27,999 bases of DNA from Ginkgo biloba (taxonomy: Eukaryota; Plantae; Ginkgophyta). Location of the stretch: contig JANKJI020000002.1 in assembly GCA_024626585.2 (NCBI GenBank), positions 184,383,501 to 184,411,499 on the forward strand. The letters are read 5' to 3'. The notes below the pieces were generated by a model that worked only from the letters and a program-made list of their open reading frames with translations, ran no database searches and was not told the DNA's origin. A program made the position numbers and the translations under genes. Positions 3,218-27,999 of this stretch are shown here, in pieces (positions within the stretch are counted from its first letter, which is position 1; every line of letters starts with the position of its first letter).

Positions 3218-6000
3218 ATGGGTGAAACTTTAAGAATCATTGAGAAATTTTGTCGTGAGAACTACCAAGACGATGATGGTGTTGATCAAGGACGAGTTGC
3301 AGAGTGTGGTCGTTGATGACGGAGGTGCAAAGACAAAAGAAGAGAAGAAAAAGTTCAAAGTGAAGGATCAAAAGGATTTAGCATCCATGTGCTTGAAGCT
3401 ACAATATTCGTAACTTGGACTTGTTTGTTCTGCTATAACCTCAAAGTCAGCTTGGAATATGTTGGACCAACATCATGAGATGAAGAGTCTTGTTCTTTGA
3501 CTATTCTTATGGAGAAAATTCTTTACTTTTTGGATGAGTGAAGAAGACAACATGATTGATCACATCAATAAGGTCAAGATGATGGCAGAGTAGCTGGAAG
3601 CCATATATGCATCTCTAAAAGAAGACAACATTGTTATGAAACTTGTGTGCACTCTACTATAAACCTACAACAATTTCATTGTATCCCTTGAATCAAGCGC
3701 TAATGATCTAAAGGTGGACTTTGTGTGTGCTTATCTTCTATATGAGAAGACATGAAGAAAGCGAGTTAGACATTCTTCTAAGGAAGAATAAGCTTTTCTT
3801 GTAAAGAAGAAAGAGGAAAAGAAGGAAAGGAGGGAGAAGAATCCCATGATATGCTTCTATTATGAAAACCTAGGTCACATGGCTCATGATTGCAAGAAGA
3901 AGAAAGTTGATTTGTAGAGCAAGAATGATGGAAAGGAATCCAAGAAATATTTTAAGAAAGGGTTTTAGTTGTTGAAGGGATTGAACACTTGTTTGTATCA
4001 ACAATTGGATCAACTCTAGAAGTTGCATGGTATATTGATTCTAGAGCATCACAACATATTATAACTCAAAAGAAGTGGTTTGGTTATGTCCAAAAAATCA
4101 AACCAAGAAGAACTTTGATGGGAGATGACTCAACTGTCATAATAGTTGAAATGGGGTAAGTTTGAGTAAAGCTCAAAGGAAGTGGAGAACACTTGTTTGT
4201 ATCAACAATTAGATCAATGCTAGAAGTTGCATGGTATATTGACTACGGAGCATCGCAACATATAATAGCTTAAAAGAAGTGGTTTGGTTACATCCAACAA
4301 ATCAAACCAAGAAGAATTTTGATGGGAGATGACTCAACTAGCACAACAATTGAAATGGGGTAAGTTTGATTAAAGCTCAAAGGAAGTGGAGGTAACTTAG
4401 TAAAGGGGATCTTCCAAGAGGTTCTATATGCCCCAAACATTGTAAAAAATCTATTTTCTATAAGTAAGATGAAAAATCAAGGTCTTCATATAATTTTTTG
4501 TGGGAAGAATTACAAAATTTTAGACCAACAATGGAATCCCTTTGCATATAGAGTTAAGGAGAGTAATCTTTACAAGTTACTCTATGTGCACACCAGAAAG
4601 GAGGAGAGTGCAAGTGTAGCAACTTATCCAATTGGAGTCACCATGTGGCATCAATGGTTCAGGAATTTGAGTGAACAAAATCTGAGAATCTTGGAAGAAA
4701 AGGATATGAGTATTGGCATGAAGTTGGAAGATCGAAGCAAGTTGTCGTTGTGTAAAGGATGTGTGCATGAGAAGCAACACGATGGGCCTTTTTCCACTGA
4801 AGGAGGCAAATGTATGGAGGAAGTGTTAATTTTGATCCACACATATCTACATGGTCCCGAAGACAACATCAATTAGTGAAGCACGCTATTTCATCACATT
4901 CATTGATGATAAGACTCGAAAAACTTTTTTTTATTTCTTGAAGACAAAGGATGATGCTTTTTCTAAATTACAAGTGTTTCAAGCTATTATGTTAGAGAAA
5001 GAGACATGAAATAAGATTAAGATCATTTATTCTAATGGAGGTGGGGAGTACACCTCAAGGGAGTTTGTCAACTATTAAGCAAAATAGGGTACCAAGCACC
5101 AAATTTCTACTTGAGACTCAACAACCCATAAGAGTTGTTGAGCGAATGAATTGCACGTTGGTAGAAAAGACATGAAACATGCTCCATGCNNNNNNNNNNT
5201 AATGGGATTAGAGTTTTGGAATAAATCTATCTCTATAGCAGCATCCTTACGAAATTTGAGTCCTATAAAATCTGTGATGGAGATAATACCAAATGAAGCT
5301 TGGTTGGGTAAGAAACCTTTAGTTTCACACTTCAATTTCTTGGATGTCATGCCTATGCATATGCCTCAAAAGAACATATACTAAGTTGGATCCGAAGACT
5401 ATGAAGTGTATCTTCCTTGACTACTACACAGATAATAAAGCATACAAGTTGATCAACCCTGAGACAAAGCAAGTCATCAAAATTCAAGATGTGATCTTCA
5501 ATGAAGAGAATCGGGAGTTCACATTCTATCCTCTCAAGAAGCAAGATGAAGAGTAGAGTTCAAAAGCTTCATCGATATAAGAAGAGCCATAGTTGCAGAA
5601 AATAGAAGAATAAGTGGAACCAAAGTTGGAAGTAGTTGAAGAGTGCATTCCCCCATTAAGGTGTTCAACTCTAGAAAAGAAACCTTCGACAAGATTTGTA
5701 GATTATGAGATGAATGATAGCATTGCCATTATTTCTGAACCTCATAGTTTTAATGAATCTTTATCCAAAGATGATGTGAAGAAGTGGGAGGATTCCATGG
5801 AAGAAGCATTTGGTTCATTGATGAAGAATAAGACTTGGATGTTGACCAAGTTACCTCAAGGATGCAAGGTAGTTGATTTCAAGTGGGTGTAATGAATCAA
5901 ATGTAATGTATATGGAGAAGTAGAGAGGTACAAAGAAAGGTTGGTTTATAAAGGATATTTTCAAACTACACAAGTTGATTTTAATGAATCTTTTTCACTG
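3218..6000 (+). mobile_element. gag-pol: Ty1/copia gag-pol pseudogene (copy B): gag, zinc knuckle, protease (duplicated), GAG-pre-integrase, integrase, start of RT; 3'-truncated
   Basis: MGETLRIIEKF at 3218; CFYYENLGHMAHDC at 3852; WYIDSRASQH at 4028 and WYIDYGASQH at 4232; WHQWFRN..CKGCVHEKQ at ~4645-4775; RYFITFIDDKTRKT and SNGGGEY at ~4885-5050; KLDPKTMKCIFLDY..KAYKL..DVIFNE at ~5383-5505; EP.SF.E..W..SMEEAFGSLMKNKTW..LP.G.K..KWV and ERYKERLVYKGYFQ..DFNESFS at ~5737-5998. INT-before-RT order is diagnostic of copia. Numerous stops. Confidence 0.95.
3983..4390 (+). repeat. Tandem duplication, 2 x 204 bp, covering the protease catalytic core
   Basis: Unit 1 3983-4186 and unit 2 4187-4390 both begin gaacacttgtttgtatcaacaatt and end aagctcaaaggaagtgga. 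About 20-25 substitutions by eye and no indels. Confidence 0.95.
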
Positions 6001-16743: not shown

Positions 16744-16843
16744 NNNNNNNNNNNNNNNNNNNNNNNNNNNNNNNNNNNNNNNNNNNNNNNNNNNNNNNNN
16801 NNNNNNNNNNNNNNNNNNNNNNNNNNNNNNNNNNNNNNNNNNN

Positions 16844-17470
16844 CAAGAATCCCCACAAAATAAGGAATAGGGGCCTTAAGAGAAAATGTTGATGAAGATA
16901 TTTTTGAAGAAGGTTTGTTATCAAACTTATACAAAAACATGATCATGCAAATCACATAACTCATTTTCACAGAGGACTACCTCGATTTTAATAATGTTTG
17001 TAACAAAAAAATTCAACAAAAAACTATGGGGAGTAATTTCATAGTAGTATATACATACCTTTTCCTTTTCCACCTACAAAAGGAAAGTATTTGAATGAAT
17101 TTGACTAAAGAATATCAAATAATTAAGAGGTATATTAATGACATCTTTAAATTCTAGAGTAGAACCAAAGAAGAATTCAAAGAGTATATTTATTCTTATT
17201 AAAAAATATACCCAAATAACATCAAAATTACCACTTTGATCTCATATTACACCATAAATATCCTGGATATTAACTTCTACAAATATGGGGATTTTTAAAA
17301 TATAGGAGTTCTTTCCACAAGATGTTATCAAAAGGAACTAAATGCTTACTAATACATTCAATTCTTATCATTGTATCCACATCATCAAAAGGAGTATTTT
17401 ATCATAAATAAATTACATTAATTCTTGTTAAGATAAAAATACCCTCATGTATTTATCATATTAAATAATC
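16844..17470 (+). mobile_element. Penelope-like element (PLE) reverse transcriptase fossil, RT motifs 3-7 plus thumb
   Basis: Single frame +1: RIPTK*GIGALRE..LIFTEDYLDFNNVCNKKIQQKTMGSNFIVVYTYLFL..IKRYINDIFKF*..IKIT..INILDINFYK..GVLSTRCYQKELNAY*YIQFLSLYPHHQKEYFIINKLH*FL. Matches the PLE pattern IP..G / F.F....Q..G.AMGS..A..YA.LF / RYIDDIF..W / IK.T / FLD / L.T..Y.K..N..Y....S.HP. Nine in-frame stops, no frameshift. Confidence 0.88.
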
Positions 17471-19874
17471 TTGTTGTACATATATTATGTATTGTTAGTG
17501 AAACATGGCTATGAACATATTGCCCTGGAGGAGTATCATGAAAGAGGCAATAAAGAGGAAGATAGAATTCCTCCACTATTTTAAGGGGTTAATACCTTAT
17601 TAAAAAAAAAAGGGAATGTACACTAAGTGGGGTGGTATTTACAATTAGAATGCATAAAGTTTTGACATTCCATTTGATTTTTATTTTATAGAATGAAGAA
17701 CAACATGAAAAAGAAAACATGGGAAGATAAAAAATAAAGAAATATTTTATTAGAGTCCACAATACTAATTATTGAATATCCAAACTCTAATAACAAAGCA
17801 ATGTGGAATGATANNNNNNNNNNNNNNNNNNNNNNNNNNNATGACTGAGGAATAGTTAACCATTAACACCCTCTTAAGGATTCTCTTAGTGTCATAAAGG
17901 AGGTCTTTCTAGTAACTCAAACTTTGGGGTCAATGAATTATATCATTCTAGTTGTCATATCATTGAAAATTATTGAATTATTTAATAGAATAAAATATCA
18001 TAAAATTACTTTCAACACTCTTCAATAGTTCTCTAAGAGTATGTGGAAAAAATAATAAATTTATTTGGATGATGAACAATATTTTTAAATAACAAACTCT
18101 AGTAACACTCGAAGCATAAAATAAAAAGATAATTTATTTTAGCATAAAAAAAATTTGGTCCAATTTATAACTCAATTCTTAAGGACTCTCAATATTAACA
18201 TATAAAAACAAAAGGAAATCAACATGTATGGACAATTCTCATAGAGTTAAAAAATTCATCATCATCATTTATCAATAGTGATTGATACTTAATGAAGATG
18301 AGATCAATAGAATATCACTAAAATTTAAGCCATAAACACTCAAACATAACTCCAATTATAATTCAATTGATGACGTAAAGAAAAAATGATTCCCACTTAA
18401 ATAATAATAGTTCTTGATATTTAAACATAAGAAATTATTCACCATATTACTATTAAGAATAATAACACCTTTAATAGAGTTTATTCTTTAAGAAATAATA
18501 TCTTGAGTCACATGTCCACAAATAAAAAATATTCCAACAATTACAAGCCTTTATAGGCCAATGTACATCAAAGTTGCAATGGAAGGAATGCATGAAAATT
18601 CATGAGGTAACACTTAGGTGAATTGTCCTGATTAGTAATCTGTGAGAAAATAAGGCATTCATGTCAATAACCAAATAGGAAGAGTGACAAGAAATAACAA
18701 TAATATGAAGGGTAAGAATACAAAGTGATTCTCTCACTAGTAGCACTCAGAGGAACCCCATATTTTTATTTTCTCTTCTCTTTTTTATCCTTCTGTTTAA
18801 TTATATTGTTGGAGAAATTAGACACAACTAAAAACTAACTTTTATTAGTCTCCCCTATGACTATTTCTTATTTCAATTGNNNNNNNNNNNNNNNNNNNNN
18901 NNNNNNNNNNNNNNNNNNNNNNNNNNNNNNNNNNNNNNNNNNNNNNNNNNNNNNNNNNNNNNNNNNNNNNNNNNNNNNNNNNNNNNNNNNNNNNNNNNNN
19001 NNNNNNNNNNNNNNNNNNNNNNNNNNNNNNNNNNNNNNNNNNNNNNNNNNNNNNNNNNNNNNNNNNNNNNNNNNNNNNNNNNNNNNNNNNNNNNNNNNNN
19101 NNNNNNNNNNNNNNNNNNNNNNNNNNNNNNNNNNNNNNNNNNNNNNNNNNNNNNNNNNNNNNNNNNNNNNNNNNNNNNNNNNNNNNNNNNNNNNNNNNNN
19201 NNNNNNNNNNNNNNNNNNNNNNNNNNNNNNNNNNNNNNNNNNNNNNNNNNNNNNNNNNNNNNNNNNNNNNNNNNNNNNNNNNNNNNNNNNNNNNNNNNNN
19301 NNNNNNNNNNNNNNNNNNNNNNNNNNNNNNNNNNNNNNNNNNNNNNNNNNNNNNNNNNNNNNNNNNNNNNNNNNNNNNNNNNNNNNNNNNNNNNNNNNNN
19401 NNNNNNNNNNNNNNNNNNNNNNNNNNNNNNNNNNNNNNNNNNNNNNNNNNNNNNNNNNNNNNNNNNNNNNNNNNNNNNNNNNNNNNNNNNNNNNNNNNNN
19501 NNNNNNNNNNNNNNNNNNNNNNNNNNNNNNNNNNNNNNNNNNNNNNNNNNNNNNNNNNNNNNNNNNNNNNNNNNNNNNNNNNNNNNNNNNNNNNNNNNNN
19601 NNNNNNNNNNNNNNNNNNNNNNNNNNNNNNNNNNNNNNNNNNNNNNNNNNNNNNNNNNNNNNNNNNNNNNNNNNNNNNNNNNNNNNNNNNNNNNNNNNNN
19701 NNNNNNNNNNNNNNNNNNNNNNNNNNNNNNNNNNNNNNNNNNNNNNNNNNNNNNNNNNNNNNNNNNNNNNNNNNNNNNNNNNNNNNNNNNNNNNNNNNNN
19801 NNNNNNNNNNNNNNNNNNNNNNNNNNNNNNNNNNNNNNNNNNNNNNNNNNNNNNNNNNNNNNNNNNNNNNNNNN

Positions 19875-19970
19875 TGTTGGGTTTATGAGCCATACTTCAC
19901 TCTTATATCTTTTCCTTTTCAATTTTAGATATTTTTCAAGATTTTTTTACACAATCGAGGAAACATAGAT
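19875..19970 (+). repeat. ~95-bp dispersed repeat, second copy at 26711-26808
   Basis: atacttca..ctttt(t)cctttt.a.tttta.at.tttttcaag..tttttacacaatc..gaaa.ata.ataa is shared by both sites. Confidence 0.7.
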
Positions 19971-19984
19971 AATATACAAGAATA

Positions 19985-22900
19985 AGGTTGGAGAATAATA
20001 CCCTTCCTAGAGGATTCATTGAGTAATGGTTTGTGAGGCATAATATCCTATAAAGACTCCTAAATGACGCTCATTCAATACTTGATTCACTTGTTCATTA
20101 TCAAAACACCTTAGCAAAAGACCATCATAGCTCCTAAAAAAAAGTATTTTATTAACCAAGACATACTTCATAACTTGAAACTTTATAGGTTACCTATACC
20201 TTTTAGTTAATCAATTTTGATGCATACAATTCTATAAATAGTAGATGATTTCATAGTACTTGGAGTTTGATCTAGCAGTGATAACATTTTCCTCAACATT
20301 TAGGGTTTGTTCATCATAGTCTTCAATTGTTATTTAACTAAGTGTGTATGTGTCTATCTTATATAATTCTTGACTCTTTATGATTCTTGTATGATTAATA
20401 TCTACGTCATACTCCTAGATATTTTAAGACTAATTATCCCACTTTCCATTAAGGTCTTATTGGTTCAACATTATATTCATAGGGGAGAGTGGTACACAGG
20501 CTACTGTGTGTCTAGATAGAATATATGATCTAAAATTTCTTATAGTCAATAATAATCTTACTTTTCTACCATTATGCACCTCAAATCATAATCCTCCAAT
20601 GAACACAATGGTATGTTTATGGCCCTCATCATATTTTTGGAGTAAATGGCCATAACATCCTCTAAGGTGTAGGCTTATATAATGCAATCATTATCAAAAT
20701 ATGGTGCTATAAGCACAAGAGAAATTTTGATTTCCTCTTTGATTTTAAAAAAATCATCTTTAGCCTCCTTTGTCCACCTTAATTCAACTTCTTTCTTTAA
20801 TAATTGAGTAATTGGATAGACAATGCTAGCAAAATCAAGGATGAACCTCATGACAAAATTAATTTTTCCTAGGAAATATTGAACCACCTTCTTAATCGAC
20901 GGTAGTGGAAATTGATGAATAGCCTTAACCCTTCTAGATCAATGTGATCTCCTTCTTTAGAAATAATATACCCCAACAATTTTCCTTGAGTTAGACTAAA
21001 ACTAGATTTTTTTGGATTCAAAGATATGCCAAATTATCTACACCTCTTAAAGATTGATATGAGATACCTAATATGATCTCTTCTATTTCTGGAGAAAATA
21101 GTGAGATCATCTAGATATATTTCAAGGATATTACCAGTCAAACCTTTGAATGTGTAATCCATTTCTCTTTGAAATATAGTGCCTACATTGATTATTTTGA
21201 GAGGTATTTAATAAGTAAAAGTTCCCCATAATGTGGTGAATGTAATTTTATGTCTATCTTCCTTAGTGATCAAAACTTGATTGTAGTCTAAAAATCCATC
21301 CAACATTAACATCATCTCAAATGCAGTTACCATCTGTAGAAATTGGTCCATCCTAAGTAACAAATAATTATTTTTCAGTGAATCTTTATTCAAATTATAA
21401 AAATCCACATAGAGGAAAATCTCTTAATTCTTCTTTCTTATTGGGACAAAATTAGCTAACCAAGTTGAGTAGCATATGGAAAATATAATTACCATAGAGA
21501 GAATATTTTGTAATTATTTCTAGATTATTTCCTATAGATTAGGAATAGCAGGTCTCTAATTCTTCTTGAATGGATTCACTCTAGGCTTTAATAGGATATT
21601 ATGTTGAATGACCTTAGGACAAAAACATTTGAGGTGATCATATGACCAATAAAAAGCATCTTCAAATTCTTATCATAGAAATGTCAACTCTAACTTTTAT
21701 TTCTCAATGCAACATTCACCAATATGAATGATCTTTGGATTTTCTATTGATCTAATATCAATTTGAAGTGTTTTCTAGACAACCTACTTAGATATCTCCT
21801 CTAATTTTAAACTCATTTGTGGCACATCATCTAGATTAAAAAAATACTCTAATATGACCAATCCCTTGGGAATTTTATTTGATATCAACTGAATGATTCC
21901 TTTTTATTTTACAATCTGATTTATCAGGGATTGATTTTGAAGCTTCTTGTCTTCAATGCAATCTACTTTGAACTCTCCATCTNNNNNNNNNNNNNNNNNN
22001 NNNNNNNNNNNNNNNNNNNNNNNNNNNNNNNNNNNNNNNNNNNNNNNNNNNNNNNNNNNNNNNNNNNNNNNNNNNNNNNNNNAATAAGGCAATCCTTAAG
22101 ATTTTCCCTGATTTTATCACTCAGATTCTCAAGAATAATTCCAACACCTATCCTCAATTTTAATTTCGCTCGATCAAAATGCATATTCCAAATGTCGACA
22201 TCCACATCATCTTTCTCCTCTAGATTAATTCAATTGTCCTTAGTTTCTAATGTTGTTAGTATAGTGTATGTACCTAGGCCTATTTCTATGAAGCAAACTT
22301 CATCTTTCACAACGTCTGCATCTTCTATATAAACTTGGTGTCACATCTCTCTTTTTACCTGAATCAACTGGTGTTGATTAGGAATCATCATAAATGATTC
22401 ATTTACGCTCATTAATCCTCTAAGTACCATGATCCCGTCATGTCCTATTAACATGGCATAAGCCTGTAGGAGTTATACTACCAACATGTTCATGACTGTA
22501 TTAAATTGTGGAAATGAATGTATCCTAACACAAAGATCTTTGATTTCACCCACCATCTTCTCAGGTTTAGAATTTATTTCCAATACGAGCTCAAAGGACT
22601 TGGTACATTCCAAACCCAACTTTTTCATAATTGTGTAAGGAATTATGTTATGATCTTCTTAAGTATCAATCATATAATTATGTGATACATAATTATGTAT
22701 CCTTAATGATACATTAAATGATATATTTGAAGGTGATGTAGGTCCCTAATTTCTCATGAGAACTATAATTAGATTAGTGACATTTTCTTGTAATGATTTA
22801 TTTAAATTATCCATTTGGATAGGGAATTTTAACACATCCAATAGAGTCATACTCATTAGGTTTTTAAATAAATTATTAAATACATTATACCCTATACAAG

Positions 22901-24009
22901 TGGAATTATCTACTCTCCTAATTTATTCCAGTCTCTACTGAGGTATAGGTATTTTCTTAGTAGGGTGGGACTTGAATGTCGAAGGTTGATCCTAAGTGAT
23001 ATTCTTTCATCAAAATTAGTTAGTTGTGCTCTAGGTATAAATATATATTTCTTGCATAACTTCCTCCTCACTCTATGCTTTCAATTTAATCACATGGGAC
23101 TACATACAACTTGTTGTTGACATGGAATGGGTGTTACAAGTACCTACTTCCTTTATCTTTTCTGGACAATTCCTAAAATATAACAAAAAATGGGCATGTC
23201 TTCCCTGGATGATCCTCCTAGAAAAAATTATAATAACAAAAGGTTTTAGTATTGGTTGTTCATAAGGGCACCCTCAATTTAGCCTACTAGTTGTGATTCT
23301 AGAAATGGTTATAGTTTGGATGGTACATTGGTCTTCTTCCTTCTCCTACCTATCTCTTTAAAAAGGTTAGTTCATTATTAAGATTTTGGATCAACCTCAA
23401 CATATATAGGGACTTATTAGTAGGTGGTGGATTTATATTTTCTACCTTTATGGGGAAAAGTATAGACTTGTCATCTTACTAGAATAAATAGGGCTGTTAT
23501 CTATTATCTTAGTAGTTATCATTGCATTAGCCAAATTATCCATATTTTTATCCTTAATACTATACCTGATTTTAGGGTCCATAGATTGAATGTGGAAGAA
23601 AAAATAGATCTCATGGTAGGCATAAATTATTATATAATCTTACTTTTCACTTGGTTGAAATGTATATTGAAGTCTTTGATATACTTGATTTCATTTTATA
23701 AATTATCACCAAGTCTTTCAGTAAAGCATGATTATTGACTAGGATACTATATTNNNNNNNNNNNNNNNTGTTAAATTATGCAACTAATATGGCCCAATAT
23801 ATAATGGAGTTCATAGGTGAAGAATTATACCAATGCAAATATTCATCTTCAAAAGTATTAATAAAAAGTATCATGATTACATTTTCTGATGTTACAACTA
23901 GTATAGTATAGGCTTTAGAGACAATGACCAAATATATTCTGGACAAATTGATCCATCTCCTTTGAATCTTGGAAGACAATATTTATATCCACTTGGTAAA
24001 GCATATATA
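19985..24009 (-). mobile_element. gag-pol: Ty3/gypsy Tat-clade gag-pol pseudogene with domain order gag-PR-aRH-RT-RH-INT (integrase truncated)
   Basis: gag LPRFKGDG..ENVIMILFINTFEDEYLHWYNSSPMNSIIYW (23980-23780); protease HNYMIDT*EDHNIIPYTIMKKLGL (~22683-22610); aRH WNMHFDRA..GVGIIL (22190-22130); IQLISNKIPKGLVILE (~21894-21847); RT DFYNLNKDSLKNNY..LDGFLDYNQ..KITFTTLWGTF and IYLDDLTIFS (21408-21090); VQYFLGKINFVMRFI (20887); RH ..EYDVDI (~20410); INT zinc-finger region RSYDGLLLRC..GYYSPTLF (~20135-19985). Confidence 0.93.
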
Positions 24010-25394
24010 NNNNNNNNNNNNNNNNNNNNNNNNNNNNNNNNNNNNNNNNNNNNNNNNNNNNNNNNNNNNNNNNNNNNNNNNNNNNNNNNNNNNNNNNNNN
24101 NNNNNNNNNNNNNNNNNNNNNNNNNNNNNNNNNNNNNNNNNNNNNNNNNNNNNNNNNNNNNNNNNNNNNNNNNNNNNNNNNNNNNNNNNNNNNNNNNNNN
24201 NNNNNNNNNNNNNNNNNNNNNNNNNNNNNNNNNNNNNNNNNNNNNNNNNNNNNNNNNNNNNNNNNNNNNNNNNNNNNNNNNNNNNNNNNNNNNNNNNNNN
24301 NNNNNNNNNNNNNNNNNNNNNNNNNNNNNNNNNNNNNNNNNNNNNNNNNNNNNNNNNNNNNNNNNNNNNNNNNNNNNNNNNNNNNNNNNNNNNNNNNNNN
24401 NNNNNNNNNNNNNNNNNNNNNNNNNNNNNNNNNNNNNNNNNNNNNNNNNNNNNNNNNNNNNNNNNNNNNNNNNNNNNNNNNNNNNNNNNNNNNNNNNNNN
24501 NNNNNNNNNNNNNNNNNNNNNNNATGCCAATTTGAGATCTTCAAGATTGTTGACTAAAGCACGTTTTTGCATTTTTCAAGCTCTGAATAGCCTTACATGT
24601 CATGTATACTTTTTTGGTCATCAACATTCTCATTTCAACACAAAAGTGATTATTAGAGAGCCCCATACTACTATGAATTTCATCTTTAAGACGTTGGGTA
24701 TTATCGTCTTTTGACTGCCTATTATTAGTCTCTGTGTTGCCCATTGTCTCTCTTATAGCAAGGGAATCTCAAAGGAGAAACATTTGAGCATGGAAAGGCT
24801 TGATTGAAATAGAATACTTTTGTAGAAGCCTAACACAGTTGTCTTTTTGAGCTCGATGACTAAAGGAACAAAACAAATTAGACATCCTCCCACACTTTGA
24901 GTAGCACATAGGGTAAAAAAATACCAGCCACTGAGTCTAGGAAATGTCTTATACGTGTTGGAAATAAACCATGTCAAGCGGATATATTGATAGTTGTGAA
25001 GTTGGCAAGCAATATTAAATTTTGATTTAGATATGCTTATAGTCCAAAATGTGGATAAGCAATATTTAGTTTAGATCATGCAAGTTCTTTTGTTCCATTC
25101 ATACCTGATCATTTAGCAACCTATAAAGGGTAAACATAATTGTTCTAGGTTTCTAATCTTGTTGCAGTCCTTTGTATTCTATCATTGTTGTTATAATTTG
25201 TTGTTCGTAGCAATTGCCATTTGTTGTTATTTATTCTCCTACCACTGCTTTTCTCTTCAAGTTTTAGTCTACTTAGTCGATGTCCATTGATTCCCATCTA
25301 CACCTACCTTCTTTCTTCATCCTTGCTATTTAGTCATCATCAATATTTACCTAGGGAGAATTTGGACTCATTCCATACTATCAAAAGACAAAAG

Positions 25395-26007
25395 GTAAGA
25401 CTTGGGATGCAATAAAGATAATGCCAAACAACTCTACCCTAGGCCCAAATGAATTAGTAATAGAATAGTATAAGGTATGCTAAGATCATTAAGCCTCGAG
25501 TAATAGATATTGTGAAGGAATCCCAAGAAAAGGGGTTTATCCATCCAATTGTCAAATTCAAGTTATTTATGTCTTTTCCCAGAAGGCAAATTAGAGGTCA
25601 ATTGCCTTAATCAATACACCTTACAAAATCATCTTAAAAGTCATAGGCAAAATCATAGCAATAAGATTGCAGAGCTTCAACTCACTACTCATTTTGGTCT
25701 CACGAAAATAATTGGCTTAGACTAAATAAAGTTTGAGATGATACAGCATGATTGATGAAATTATGCATTGAATACAAATAAAAAATGGAAATTAAAGGGT
25801 ACAAAGTAGATATAATAAAGGCACTCGAGATGAGATAATGGCCTCTAGGATGGGCAATTTTAGGACAATGGAACTTTCTTAGACTTTTTGTAAAATGCAC
25901 AACAACATGCCTCAAAACTTCAAAATTATCTCTCAAGTCCAATGGAGGCAAACCATTCTTTTTTTCTTTTATGATAGGGATGCCCATTATCACCTACTCT
26001 ATATATT
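25395..26007 (+). mobile_element. LINE (L1-clade) reverse transcriptase remnant
   Basis: WDAIKIMPNNSTLGPNELVIE*YK (cf. KxPGPDGxxxEFY); N*RSIALINTPYKIILKVI..IRLQ at 25589-25672 (cf. WRPIxLxNxxYKIIxKxxxxRL); VDIIKA (cf. LDxxKA); **GCPLSPTLYI at 25972-26007 (cf. RQGxPLSPxLF, CGA CAG>TGA TAG). Confidence 0.88.
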
Positions 26008-26710
26008 CAAGGAATAAATACTTTATCTAGATTCCTGAATTGGTTCACGCGTGGTCAGATATGACGCGAAAGAGTGAGAATAGAAAATGCTACTTACAAG
26101 GTAGGTGTAGGTGATTAGAAATAGAGTTGTGGGATTGCAAGAAAATGACTCATTATATTTTTCCTCCAAAAACTTGAACCCCCTGCAAACCCAATCTCTC
26201 AAAATTTGGTGGGATTATCACTTAATTATCCTTTCTTTCTTTATTTTTAGGTTTTCATTATTGATTTTCTTTAGGAATTATTTTAAGAAGAGAATTTAAG
26301 TGTGCCCATATAATCCTTCTAAACCTCTAAAAAACCAAAATTCAATTGTACTTTATTAATTTTTGGGTCCATGGGATGGAGTAAAGTGACTTGTTCACTA
26401 TTTATCCTTGATCCATACCAAAATCCAAATTCTAAATATGGCCATTGGTATAGTTTTGTATGTGATCTCCTAATTAACTAAAATTTATTTTACACTTAGG
26501 TCCATAATAAAGTAGAATTTCCTTGCATGATTCTAAACTTTAAGAACATAAAACCTTAACAAATTCTTTTTCAACTTAAATTGAATTTGTGTTTGGGTTT
26601 TGTTAGGGGTTGATTTTATTCACTTAACATTCCTCAAAACCCTGAATACTAAAAGGTGTCCTAAAGTGATGGAAGAATTAAGAATTATTTTACTATAAGT
26701 TTACTCTCCT

Positions 26711-26808
26711 ATTGTGTCTCTGATAAATACTTCATAGTTCCCTCTTTTCCTTTTTAGTTTTATATGTTTTTCAAGGTATTTTTACACAATCAATGAAAGA
26801 TAAATAAA
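26711..26808 (+). repeat. Second copy of the ~95-bp dispersed repeat at 19875-19970
   Basis: Direct alignment by eye with 19875-19970. Confidence 0.7.
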
Positions 26809-27999
26809 TTTGCCTCCATTGTAAAACCCCTGAAATACCAAAACTCTGAGTAGTCCTTTTTATAAGTATGAATTGCATATAATAACTCATACGTAAATCC
26901 CCCCTTTTTATGTTCTAAATACCAAATGATTCTAAACAAAAAACTTCTCATATTGAAATTGATCCCATTATTATGATGAATTTTATGCCTATTATCATCC
27001 TCTTCATTACTTGAAGAACTTCCTCAATATTTGATTCCATGTTGATCTCCTAAGTAGCCTTCTCTTGATTACGTATAAAAGTACATGAAAAGTATGGTTT
27101 CTATACATGGGTCAACAAATATATTCTATAAAATACTTTTAGAAAGATGATGTACAAGTAAATATCTATTATAGTGCTTTAACAAAGTGTCTATAAGAGA
27201 TCATTTCATGCTACTCAAAAAATACTTCTTAAAAATAGTAAAAATAGGCCAGAGAGCCCCCTTGGTGATGAAATTGGACTATTATAAAAGGTCCAAAAAC
27301 TTGAACCTAGGGGATACCCTAAACCCTATACTTTTAGAGATTATGTAGAAAGACCCAGCATGTGGCACACTTTAAAGATAATAGTCTATTAGAGAAACCC
27401 TAATAAGTTGGGAAGCCTTCTCACACATTACAATTTTTCCTTAGAAAATAATAAAATGGAATCAATGTATGAATAAAGGAAGAATACGATAAATACATCA
27501 AAATATTTAGTTTTTTAGGAAATCCTAAGGCCTCTGAAATGAAAATAGTGACTTAAAAACCCTTATGTTAATTATTTAAAAAAATGTTCCTCAATAATGA
27601 AAGGGAGTTTTTTGAGTAGTTTTTCCAGCTAACCTTCTTTACATGTGCATTTTGATGATAATTTAAAATGTATATGGATTTCACTTTCTTATTTCCTCTC
27701 TTAAGAAAACTTATCTACCAATGATATAATAAAGATTAAAATGCATTCAATTACTAAGAGAAGATATTTTTTGACATATTGTGAACCTTTATTCAAATAT
27801 TTTATGTCAAAGTCATATTTTCATTGTTGTAATGTTTTTTCACTAGTTAGTTTTCTATAATTAATGTTATAATTTTTTCTATACATATATTGTTTCTTGC
27901 CAAATTTCATACTATTAAAACTAAAAATGGATCAAAAAATGAATCACGAGGATCATATGCTACTTCAATATAAAAGATAAAGATAAGCACATAAACCCA

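What the first reader, a model, noticed from the sequence alone, without database searches (positions are those of the whole stretch)
16844..17470. Hidden Penelope-like reverse transcriptase, apparently not of the conifer Dryad type
Seen: about 209 codons in one frame, broken only by 9 stops so absent from the ORF track, carrying TMGS, RYINDIF (YIND at 17131-17142, GAT>AAT from YIDD), IKIT, ILD and STRCYQKELNAY*YI...YPHHQK. Established: this motif order is PLE RT (the telomerase-related class). PLEs are patchy in land plants, and the well-known seed-plant group is the conifer Dryads of the Penelope/Poseidon type, whose thumb motif is typically YRKPT(H/N)TxxYL. Inference: the YQKxLNxYxYI..S.HP form recalls the Chlamys/Naiad-type PLEs described from green algae and lycophytes. 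If the host is a gymnosperm, as the Tat element suggests, this could be an unreported seed-plant PLE lineage, either vertically retained or horizontally acquired.
Basis: partly seen in the sequence, partly recalled or inferred. Interest (0 to 1): 0.8.

Follow-up and report, generated by a model that had tools for sequence, protein, structure and literature searches.

The report
Dead endonuclease-free Penelope-like retroelement relic
The stretch is a real but long-dead piece of a Penelope-like retrotransposon of the endonuclease-free, telomere-associated kind already known from spike moss and conifers, here most likely in Ginkgo, so it is a modest addition rather than a new lineage.

Summary
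Frame 16846 (+) reads a Penelope-like (PLE) reverse transcriptase with 9 stops, from the end of motif A to the thumb. It scores 47 bits (E 5e-15) against generic PLEs and 183 bits (E 5e-56) against its own family. No other frame or contig matches, except a second piece of the same ORF at 27118-27428. The two pieces meet at the same codon, so one copy was split by about 9.6 kb of other repeats.

The closest protein is Ginkgo biloba gene model Gb_11119 (215 bits, 56% identity). Next come Cryptomeria, Picea, Selaginella and Closterium proteins of about 600 aa. All of these end before the point where canonical PLEs carry the GIY-YIG endonuclease.

- "Not Dryad" is supported.
- "Chlamys/Naiad-like" is not supported. 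The family has no insertion-in-fingers domain, no CxC motif and no N-terminal endonuclease, and one relative carries a hammerhead motif.
- "Unreported seed-plant lineage" is not supported. A review lists EN(-) PLEs in Pinus, Picea and Selaginella.

The copy is an interstitial pseudogene. It lacks ORF1 and the 5' 300 codons of ORF2.

First readers of this scan noted PLE RTs at several other places in this genome. In passing, I found a telomere-like 11-mer inside ORF2 that is invariant in eight relatives.

The parts
16844..17471 (+). PLE ORF2 fragment 1: end of RT motif 3(A) ('IP'), then motifs 4(B) TMGS, 5(C) RYIND, 6, 7 and the thumb, plus about 25 codons. Frame of 16846; 9 stops.
   Evidence: Family profile positions 300-502 of 604, 182.6 bits, E 5e-56. 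215 bits, 56% identity to Ginkgo Gb_11119 residues 455-647.
17131..17142 (+). Degenerate catalytic motif YIND. Relatives have YIDD.
16744..16843 (.). Left assembly gap. The 5' 300 codons of ORF2 and all of ORF1 are missing from here on.
   Evidence: No hit to family profile positions 1-299 or to ORF1 anywhere in the window. One contig (X6 record 24) carries 245 more bases to the left of 16844, and the listed pieces do not bridge the gap.
17472..27117 (.). Intervening 9.6 kb of other repeats, with 6 assembly gaps, that splits the PLE copy. Its ends read TGTTG...CAACA.
   Evidence: Profile position 502 ends at the left junction and position 500 resumes at the right one. Contig depth jumps at about 17460. 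No LTR pair was found between the two ends.
17467..17471 (+). AATCT, a possible target-site duplication. Its partner is AATAT at 27118-27122.
   Evidence: Read from the sequence; inference only.
17814..17840 (.). A gap of 27 N that is really about 0 bp.
   Evidence: X1 record 5 (823 nt) spans 17616-18465 with exactly the 27 N left out.
27118..27378 (+). PLE ORF2 fragment 2: the region after the thumb. 4 stops.
   Evidence: Family profile positions 500-582, 36-39 bits, E 1e-11.
27381..27428 (+). Last conserved block of ORF2 (..RNPNKLGSLL..), after a frameshift and with one stop. In relatives the ORF ends a few codons later, with no endonuclease.
   Evidence: The alignment with relatives ends at the same point.
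27317..27327 (+). Telomere-like CCCTAAACCCT inside ORF2 (codons for T-L-N-P). It is the only such 10-mer in the 28-kb window.

Best explanation
This is a decayed, non-functional copy of an endonuclease-deficient (EN-) Penelope-like retrotransposon. It belongs to a streptophyte family whose living members have two ORFs: ORF1 (about 430-630 aa, no known domain) and ORF2 (about 600 aa, holding the PLE N-terminal motifs with DKN, RT motifs 1-7, the thumb and a C-terminal extension). ORF2 stops exactly where canonical PLEs continue into the GIY-YIG endonuclease. The family has the features of the Coprina type. The host is most likely Ginkgo biloba. The window keeps only the 3' half of ORF2. That half is broken into two pieces (16844-17471 and 27118-27428) by about 9.6 kb of later repeat insertions, and it carries 14 stops and one frameshift. 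Active relatives are thought to transpose without an endonuclease: their RNA pairs with an exposed telomeric G-rich 3' end, the element's RT extends that end, and telomerase re-caps it. That mechanism is inferred from the literature and from the telomere-flanked relatives. Nothing here shows it for this copy, which lies inside a chromosome and cannot work.
For: The PLE RT homology is frame-specific and colinear. A whole-library search with the 44-aa piece found Ginkgo gene models Gb_11119 and Gb_23740. The fragment scores 215 bits against Gb_11119, 142 against Cryptomeria, 97 against Selaginella and 66 against Closterium, but at most 56 against any EN+ PLE. The first ~58 relatives of Gb_11119 lack GIY-YIG, and nearly all of the full-length ones end within a few residues of the same profile end. 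The alignment shows EN+ PLEs running on into the Zn-finger linker and GIY-YIG at that point. In the tree, EN-less and EN+ rows are split with SH-aLRT 99, and the window is sister to Gb_11119 (99) inside a gymnosperm group with Cryptomeria and Picea. The second ORF piece resumes at the same codon. All relatives have DKN, no CxC motif and an A-to-B spacing of 59-64 aa. ORF1 lies upstream of ORF2 in L121, L122, L124 and L126, and has no endonuclease. A hammerhead motif with an intact core is present in L121. Telomere arrays flank copies in Cryptomeria (L128) and Selaginella (L124). Literature: EN(-) PLEs are listed for Selaginella, Pinus taeda and Picea abies (PMC9033089); Coprina elements have DKN, may have two ORFs, and sit between telomeric repeats (PMC13159263).
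Against: No curated Coprina, Athena or Dryad sequence could be put into the tree, so the label 'Coprina' rests on architecture, the DKN motif, the telomere context of relatives and the literature. The tree root is arbitrary. The window copy has no telomeric array, no hammerhead and no ORF1, so the family's defining context is seen only in relatives. The host name comes from the nearest protein only, because run and organism names were coded. The block between the two pieces spans 6 assembly gaps, so its true length and make-up are uncertain.
Confidence: 0.85

Rival explanations
1. It belongs to the N-terminal-endonuclease clade (Chlamys/Naiad) or its endonuclease-less offshoot PLE-X.
For: A Selaginella protein and streptophyte-alga (Closterium) proteins are among the relatives. 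PLE-X elements also lack the endonuclease and have hammerheads (PMC8557442).
Against: The motif A-to-B spacing is 59-64 aa, the same as in canonical PLEs, so the 20-40 aa IFD is absent. No CxC motif lies upstream of the GxKF motif in 22 relatives. There is no GIY-YIG in ORF1 or in N-terminal extensions. The Selaginella copy sits between telomeric repeats, with no rRNA hit, and not in 28S rDNA. The thumb form Y.K..(D/N).(H/Y)QY(L/I) also occurs in canonical C-terminal-EN PLEs.
Confidence: 0.06
2. It is a Dryad: the EN(+) Penelope/Poseidon-type element of conifers, here with the endonuclease lost or not assembled.
For: The host is a gymnosperm, and conifers carry Dryads (PMC8557442, PMC9033089).
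Against: The ORF end is present at about 27430, and nothing with GIY-YIG similarity follows or occurs anywhere in the window. The fragment scores 25 bits against Poseidon-type ORFs but 215 against the EN-less Ginkgo protein. The EN+ rows, including Poseidon-type ones, are separated from it with support 99. Secondary sources state that EN(+) PLEs are absent from non-conifer gymnosperms (PMC10473749).
Confidence: 0.03
3. It is a chance motif string or another class of RT (LINE, LTR element, caulimovirid), or a contaminant or mis-scaffolded contig.
For: Pfam finds nothing on the stop-free pieces. The contig is short and lies between gaps.
Against: The match has E 5e-56 in one frame only. Twenty runs of one organism from six studies hold the contig. 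Independent contigs reproduce it and bridge the right gap.
Confidence: 0.01

Closest known systems
Coprina-type EN(-) Penelope-like elements (Repbase Coprina Sm1/Sm2 of Selaginella; EN(-) PLEs of Pinus taeda and Picea abies; fungal Coprina)
   Same: RT of PLE type with DKN, no endonuclease and an ORF ending after the thumb extension. Relatives have an upstream ORF1, a hammerhead motif, head-to-tail arrays and flanking telomeric repeats.
   Different: The window copy is interstitial, 5'-truncated, split and dead. The host (Ginkgo) is not named for such elements in the papers I could read. Classic Coprina is described with one ORF, whereas this family has two, as does Coprina-1_Alen (PMC13159263).
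Athena (EN- PLEs of bdelloid rotifers)
   Same: Two ORFs, no endonuclease, telomere association, hammerheads.
   Different: It is an animal clade. No Athena sequence was available to compare, and the relatives here are all streptophyte or unlabelled.
Dryad (conifer EN+ PLEs, Penelope/Poseidon group)
   Same: A PLE RT in a gymnosperm genome.
   Different: Dryads carry a C-terminal GIY-YIG, which this family does not. RT similarity to Poseidon-type ORFs is low (25 bits).
Chlamys / Naiad / PLE-X (N-terminal EN clade)
   Same: Presence in the green lineage. PLE-X also lacks the endonuclease.
   Different: No IFD, no CxC motif, no N-terminal GIY-YIG, a different target context, and a hammerhead motif in one relative.
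Telomerase reverse transcriptase (TERT)
   Same: Sister RT class by the literature. The family's RNA holds a telomere-complementary string.
   Different: This is a mobile element with its own ORFs. No similarity to TERT was tested here.

Membership tests
Penelope-like element RT | RT motifs 3(A)-7 plus the PLE thumb, in PLE order and spacing, matching PLE profiles | tested here: met
   47 bits E 5e-15 against a generic PLE profile; 183 bits E 5e-56 against the family profile.
Penelope-like element RT | N-terminal motifs (GxKF/Y, DKG/DKN) and RT motifs 1-2 | tested here: inconclusive
   Absent from the window, where the copy is cut at the gap. Present in Gb_11119 and all full-length relatives.
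EN(-) PLE (Coprina/Athena type) | No GIY-YIG endonuclease at either end of the RT protein | tested here: met
   The window's ORF end at about 27430 is followed by no EN. The EN profile finds nothing in the window. The first ~58 relatives of Gb_11119 lack EN, and nearly all of the full-length ones end at the same point. ORF1s lack EN.
EN(-) PLE (Coprina/Athena type) | Location at or in telomeric repeats, with reverse-complement telomeric repeats at the element's end | tested here: inconclusive
   Met in relatives: L128 (Cryptomeria) has arrays of 40 and 90 units, and L124 (Selaginella) is also flanked. Not met in the window, which has no array and lies more than 124 Mb into a chromosome-scale piece.
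EN(-) PLE (Coprina/Athena type) | Hammerhead ribozyme motif in the flanking repeat | tested here: inconclusive
   L121 has an HH9-like hit of 29.6 bits (below the gathering score of 52) with an intact CUGAUGAG..CGAAAC core. None was found in the window or in five other relatives' loci.
Coprina clade specifically | RT groups with curated Coprina references | not testable with these tools
   Repbase sequences and the supplements of Craig et al. are not held. Gladyshev & Arkhipova 2007 and Lin et al. 2016 are not held.
Dryad | C-terminal GIY-YIG endonuclease | tested here: not met
Dryad | RT inside the Penelope/Poseidon clade | tested here: not met
   The window groups with EN-less plant proteins. 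Poseidon-type ORFs (no linker Zn-finger) lie across a branch with support 99. No bona fide Dryad was in the tree.
Naiad/Chlamys | N-terminal GIY-YIG endonuclease | tested here: not met
   No EN in ORF1s or N-terminal extensions of relatives. Not testable in the window copy itself.
Naiad/Chlamys | Insertion-in-fingers domain: 20-40 extra aa between RT3(A) and RT4(B) | tested here: not met
   In the window, 'IP' to 'MGS' is 58 aa, against 56 in the canonical profile. Relatives have 59-64 aa, against 59-63 in EN+ PLEs.
Naiad/Chlamys/PLE-X | CxC motif upstream of GxKF/Y | tested here: not met
   None in 22 relatives.

The most novel reading that the evidence does not exclude
The invariant telomere-like 11-mer CCCTAAACCCT inside ORF2 may be a working cis element of these gymnosperm and lycophyte EN(-) PLEs. 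When reverse transcription reaches it, the new DNA end reads as a telomere end, and telomerase can extend it. Alternatively, it may be the site where the RNA pairs with the G-overhang. If so, these elements take part in building chromosome ends in Cryptomeria and probably Ginkgo, and interstitial relics such as this one would mark old chromosome ends or healed breaks.
Probability: 0.3. Interest if true: 0.6.

Novelty: new member of a known kind. Interest (0 to 1): 0.4.

Why it matters
It corrects a tempting reading. The PLE relics in this gymnosperm genome are neither Dryads nor Chlamys/Naiad elements. They belong to the endonuclease-free, telomere-associated PLE family that runs from streptophyte algae through Selaginella to conifers and Ginkgo in a pattern that fits vertical descent. 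That extends the known host range of plant EN(-) PLEs to Ginkgo, where gene models Gb_11119, Gb_23740 and Gb_17826 are such elements annotated as genes. It also gives a profile for masking them. The single copy in the window has no function. The conserved internal telomere string and its in-register junctions with telomere arrays in Cryptomeria are the part that could interest people who work on telomeres and retroelements.

Tried and rejected
- Pfam on five stop-free pieces gave no hit.
- The word-index protein search with the 44-aa piece found nothing, probably because of its length filter.
- The protein-atlas features search gave only weak rotifer hits of 0.81-0.83, which I did not use as evidence.
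- The thumb-motif DNA pattern found nothing in viral contigs.
- By eye, 'GVVFTI'/'GWY..C' at about 17626 and 'HGYE' at 17504 looked like a GIY-YIG start and an NGYP linker. Neither an EN profile of 86 sequences nor a C-terminal profile scores them above the window's background, and the true continuation of the ORF lies at 27118. I rejected this reading.
- I looked for a simple LTR-retrotransposon insertion between the two ORF pieces. Only an 81-96 nt repeat was found (19877-19972 / 26712-26807), and local alignment of the two ends scores no better than shuffles. The 5-bp near-repeat and TG..CA ends remain a hint only.
- No hammerhead was found in the window at gathering or E<=1 thresholds.
- No ORF1 and no 5' half of ORF2 were found anywhere in the window.
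- Lin et al. 2016, Gladyshev & Arkhipova 2007 and the supplements of Craig et al. 2021 are not held, so no curated clade references could be used.
Stops were read as X.

Full report
**1. The observation**

The window is a gap-rich, AT-rich plant scaffold with 15 runs of N and about 30% G+C. The finding lies on a 970-bp contig (16844-17813) between two gaps.

Translating 16846-17470 on the + strand gives 208 codons with exactly 9 stops. The longest stop-free piece is 44 aa. That explains why Pfam and the word-index protein search returned nothing.

**2. Is it more than chance?**

I fetched 120 metagenome loci with a DNA pattern for the canonical PLE thumb and took their ORFs as references. With stops read as X, only the 16846 frame matches them. 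The match is colinear over about 150-180 residues (best 27.9 bits), and the other five frames give nothing.

A profile of seven near-full PLE ORFs was run against all 96 six-frame contig translations of the window. It hits this frame alone, at 47.1 bits and E 5e-15. The match covers profile positions 414-585 of 801, from the end of RT motif 3(A) to the thumb. [quoted passage not shown] The PLE RT reading is therefore confirmed.

**3. Is the contig genuine?**

Twenty sequencing runs of a single (coded) organism, from six studies, hold the contig. An independent contig reproduces 16844-17642 without a difference. Another spans 17616-18465 with exactly the 27 N left out, so the right-hand gap is about 0 bp and that link is real.

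The left gap is not bridged by the pieces listed. Several contigs about 81-82% alike cover parts of the RT, so a few paralogues exist. Contig depth rises sharply at about 17460, where a much more repeated sequence begins.

**4. Closest relatives**

The whole-library HMMER search with the 44-aa piece returned three proteins. Two are Ginkgo biloba gene models in EukProt: Gb_11119 (658 aa) and Gb_23740.

Scores of the X-read fragment against relatives:

| Relative | Bits |
|---|---|
| Gb_11119, residues 455-647 (E 1e-65, 56% identity) | 215 |
| Cryptomeria japonica LOC131042973 | 142 |
| Selaginella moellendorffii LOC112343723 | 97 |
| Closterium proteins | 66 |
| Any endonuclease-bearing PLE | at most 56 |

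A word search from Gb_11119 lists several Cryptomeria proteins (47-53% identical, about 490-626 aa). It also lists the Selaginella protein (41%), Closterium proteins (33%, about 1040 aa) and many unlabelled proteins of about 600 aa. One cluster contains Picea glauca KUM45112.1.

**5. Architecture of the family**

- **No endonuclease.** The first ~58 relatives lack any GIY-YIG match, and nearly all of the full-length ones end within a few residues of the same profile end. In a joint alignment, canonical PLEs continue at that very point into the Zn-finger linker and GIY-YIG.
- **Two ORFs.** Contigs of relatives show an upstream ORF1 of 298-633 aa with no Pfam domain and no endonuclease, followed by the RT ORF2. 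The N-terminal 200 aa of Gb_11119 is homologous to that ORF1.
- **Diagnostic motifs.** All relatives have DKN where EN+ PLEs have DKG. None has a CxC motif upstream of GxKF. Their motif A-to-B spacing is 59-64 aa, against 59-63 in EN+ PLEs. In the window itself, 'IP' to 'MGS' is 58 aa, against 56 in the canonical profile.
- **Hammerhead.** One relative (L121) carries an HH9-like hammerhead with an intact core, at 29.6 bits, which is below Rfam's gathering score.
- **Genomic context.** Copies lie head to tail in Cryptomeria and Closterium. They are flanked by telomeric arrays in Cryptomeria (L128) and Selaginella (L124).

**6. A second piece of the same ORF**

The family profile (604 positions) matches 16849-17475 at positions 300-502 (182.6 bits, E 5e-56). 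It also matches 27118-27378 on the same strand at positions 500-582 (36-39 bits, E 1e-11). After a frameshift, the last conserved block follows at 27381-27428.

The two pieces meet at the same codon, so one copy was split by 9.6 kb of other sequence (17472-27117, including 6 assembly gaps). The intervening block begins TGTTG and ends CAACA, and it is flanked by AATCT and AATAT. That suggests an LTR-type insertion, but I found no LTR pair, so it remains a hint.

No ORF1, no 5' half of ORF2, no endonuclease, no hammerhead and no telomeric array occur in the window.

**7. Tree**

The tree has 71 rows, built by a quick IQ-TREE search with SH-aLRT support.

- All endonuclease-bearing rows are separated from all endonuclease-less rows with support 99. 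The former include those with the linker Zn-finger and the Poseidon-type ones without it.
- The window fragment is sister to Gb_11119 (99).
- That pair sits in a group with Cryptomeria and the Picea cluster (98).
- Selaginella branches outside that group (99), and then Closterium (92).

This order fits vertical descent in streptophytes. The root is arbitrary, and no curated clade reference was in the tree.

**8. Comparison with what is known**

- Craig et al. (PMC8557442) define Naiad/Chlamys by an N-terminal GIY-YIG, a CxC motif, an IFD of 20-40 aa and, mostly, no hammerhead. Each of these was tested here and not met.
- PLE-X lacks the endonuclease but keeps CxC, and in Selaginella it targets 28S rDNA. 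The Selaginella relative here sits in telomeric repeats with no rRNA hit.
- Dryads are EN(+) elements of the Penelope/Poseidon group (PMC8557442; PMC9033089). This family has no endonuclease and is remote from Poseidon-type RTs.
- The review PMC9033089 lists EN(-) PLEs for Selaginella, Pinus taeda and Picea abies.
- PMC13159263 describes Coprina elements with DKN, sometimes two ORFs and telomeric repeats on both sides, and it names Repbase Coprina Sm1/Sm2 from Selaginella.

The family therefore has the features of the EN(-), Coprina-type PLEs. I found no paper in the held library that reports PLEs in Ginkgo.

**9. How it works**

- **Shown here:** the copy is a pseudogene fragment and cannot act.
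- **Inferred for the family, from the literature cited above and the context of relatives:** transcripts from head-to-tail copies are cut by the hammerhead. A telomere-complementary stretch of the RNA pairs with an exposed G-rich chromosome end, the element's RT extends that end, and telomerase re-caps it.

**10. Seen in passing**

The string CCCTAAACCCT (codons xCC CTA AAC CCT) lies about 130-150 nt before the ORF2 stop where the full 3' end is held. It is identical in the window and seven relatives, from Selaginella to Cryptomeria. The flanking codons each show 3-7 variants. The first codon changes its amino acid (T, A or S) yet keeps CC.

In the Cryptomeria contig L128, two long (CCCTAAA)n arrays run in register into this string at the start of partial copies. 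Positions 369-1023 are 99.5% identical to 4604-5258, so this segment acts as a pseudo-LTR that begins at the motif. This points to constraint at the nucleotide level and to a role in joining the element to telomeres. It is not established.

**11. Verdict**

It is a PLE RT and it is not a Dryad. It is not Chlamys/Naiad-like, and it is not an unreported seed-plant lineage.
- It is a new member, probably in a new host, of a known kind.

First readers of this scan noted PLE RTs without a C-terminal endonuclease at other places in the same genome. That agrees with the family picture given here.

Noticed in passing
window 27317-27327; L121 3486, L122 3433, L123 3564, L124 5616, L126 3736, L127 2171, L128 4604: The telomere-like 11-mer CCCTAAACCCT inside ORF2 (codons for T/A/S-L-N-P) is invariant at the nucleotide level in eight family members, while neighbouring codons vary freely. 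It is the only such 10-mer in the 28-kb window.
   Followed up: partly
L128 (Cryptomeria japonica BSEH01001123.1) 96-375, 369-1023, 4604-5258, 5255-5884: Two long (CCCTAAA)n arrays of 40 and 90 units flank an element and run in register into the internal 11-mer of a partial copy. That partial copy is a 655-bp pseudo-LTR, 99.5% identical to the element's 3' end. A second, more diverged element follows the second array.
   Followed up: partly
L121 202-272 and contig ends: An HH9-like hammerhead with an intact CUGAUGAG..CGAAAC core, whose helix II holds ACCCUAAA. The contig's first and last 29 nt are identical, so the unit of about 3.9 kb is tandem or circular. Its ORF2 cluster includes a protein annotated on the Picea glauca mitochondrial genome (ABT39_MTgene4059).
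   Followed up: partly
window 17589-17864: Several contigs of other copies of the flanking high-copy repeat join 17588/17589 directly to 17865. So this 276-bp stretch, which includes the 27-N 'gap', is an insertion here or a deletion elsewhere.
   Followed up: no
window 19877-19972 and 26712-26807: A 96-nt direct repeat (77-80% identical) 6.8 kb apart inside the block that splits the PLE. It may be a remnant of the LTRs of a nested element.
   Followed up: no
P0122 (Ginkgo Gb_11119), P0121 (Gb_23740), P0223 (Gb_17826): Ginkgo gene models that are in fact PLE ORFs. Gb_11119 fuses part of ORF1 to ORF2 and ends early after the thumb.
   Followed up: partly
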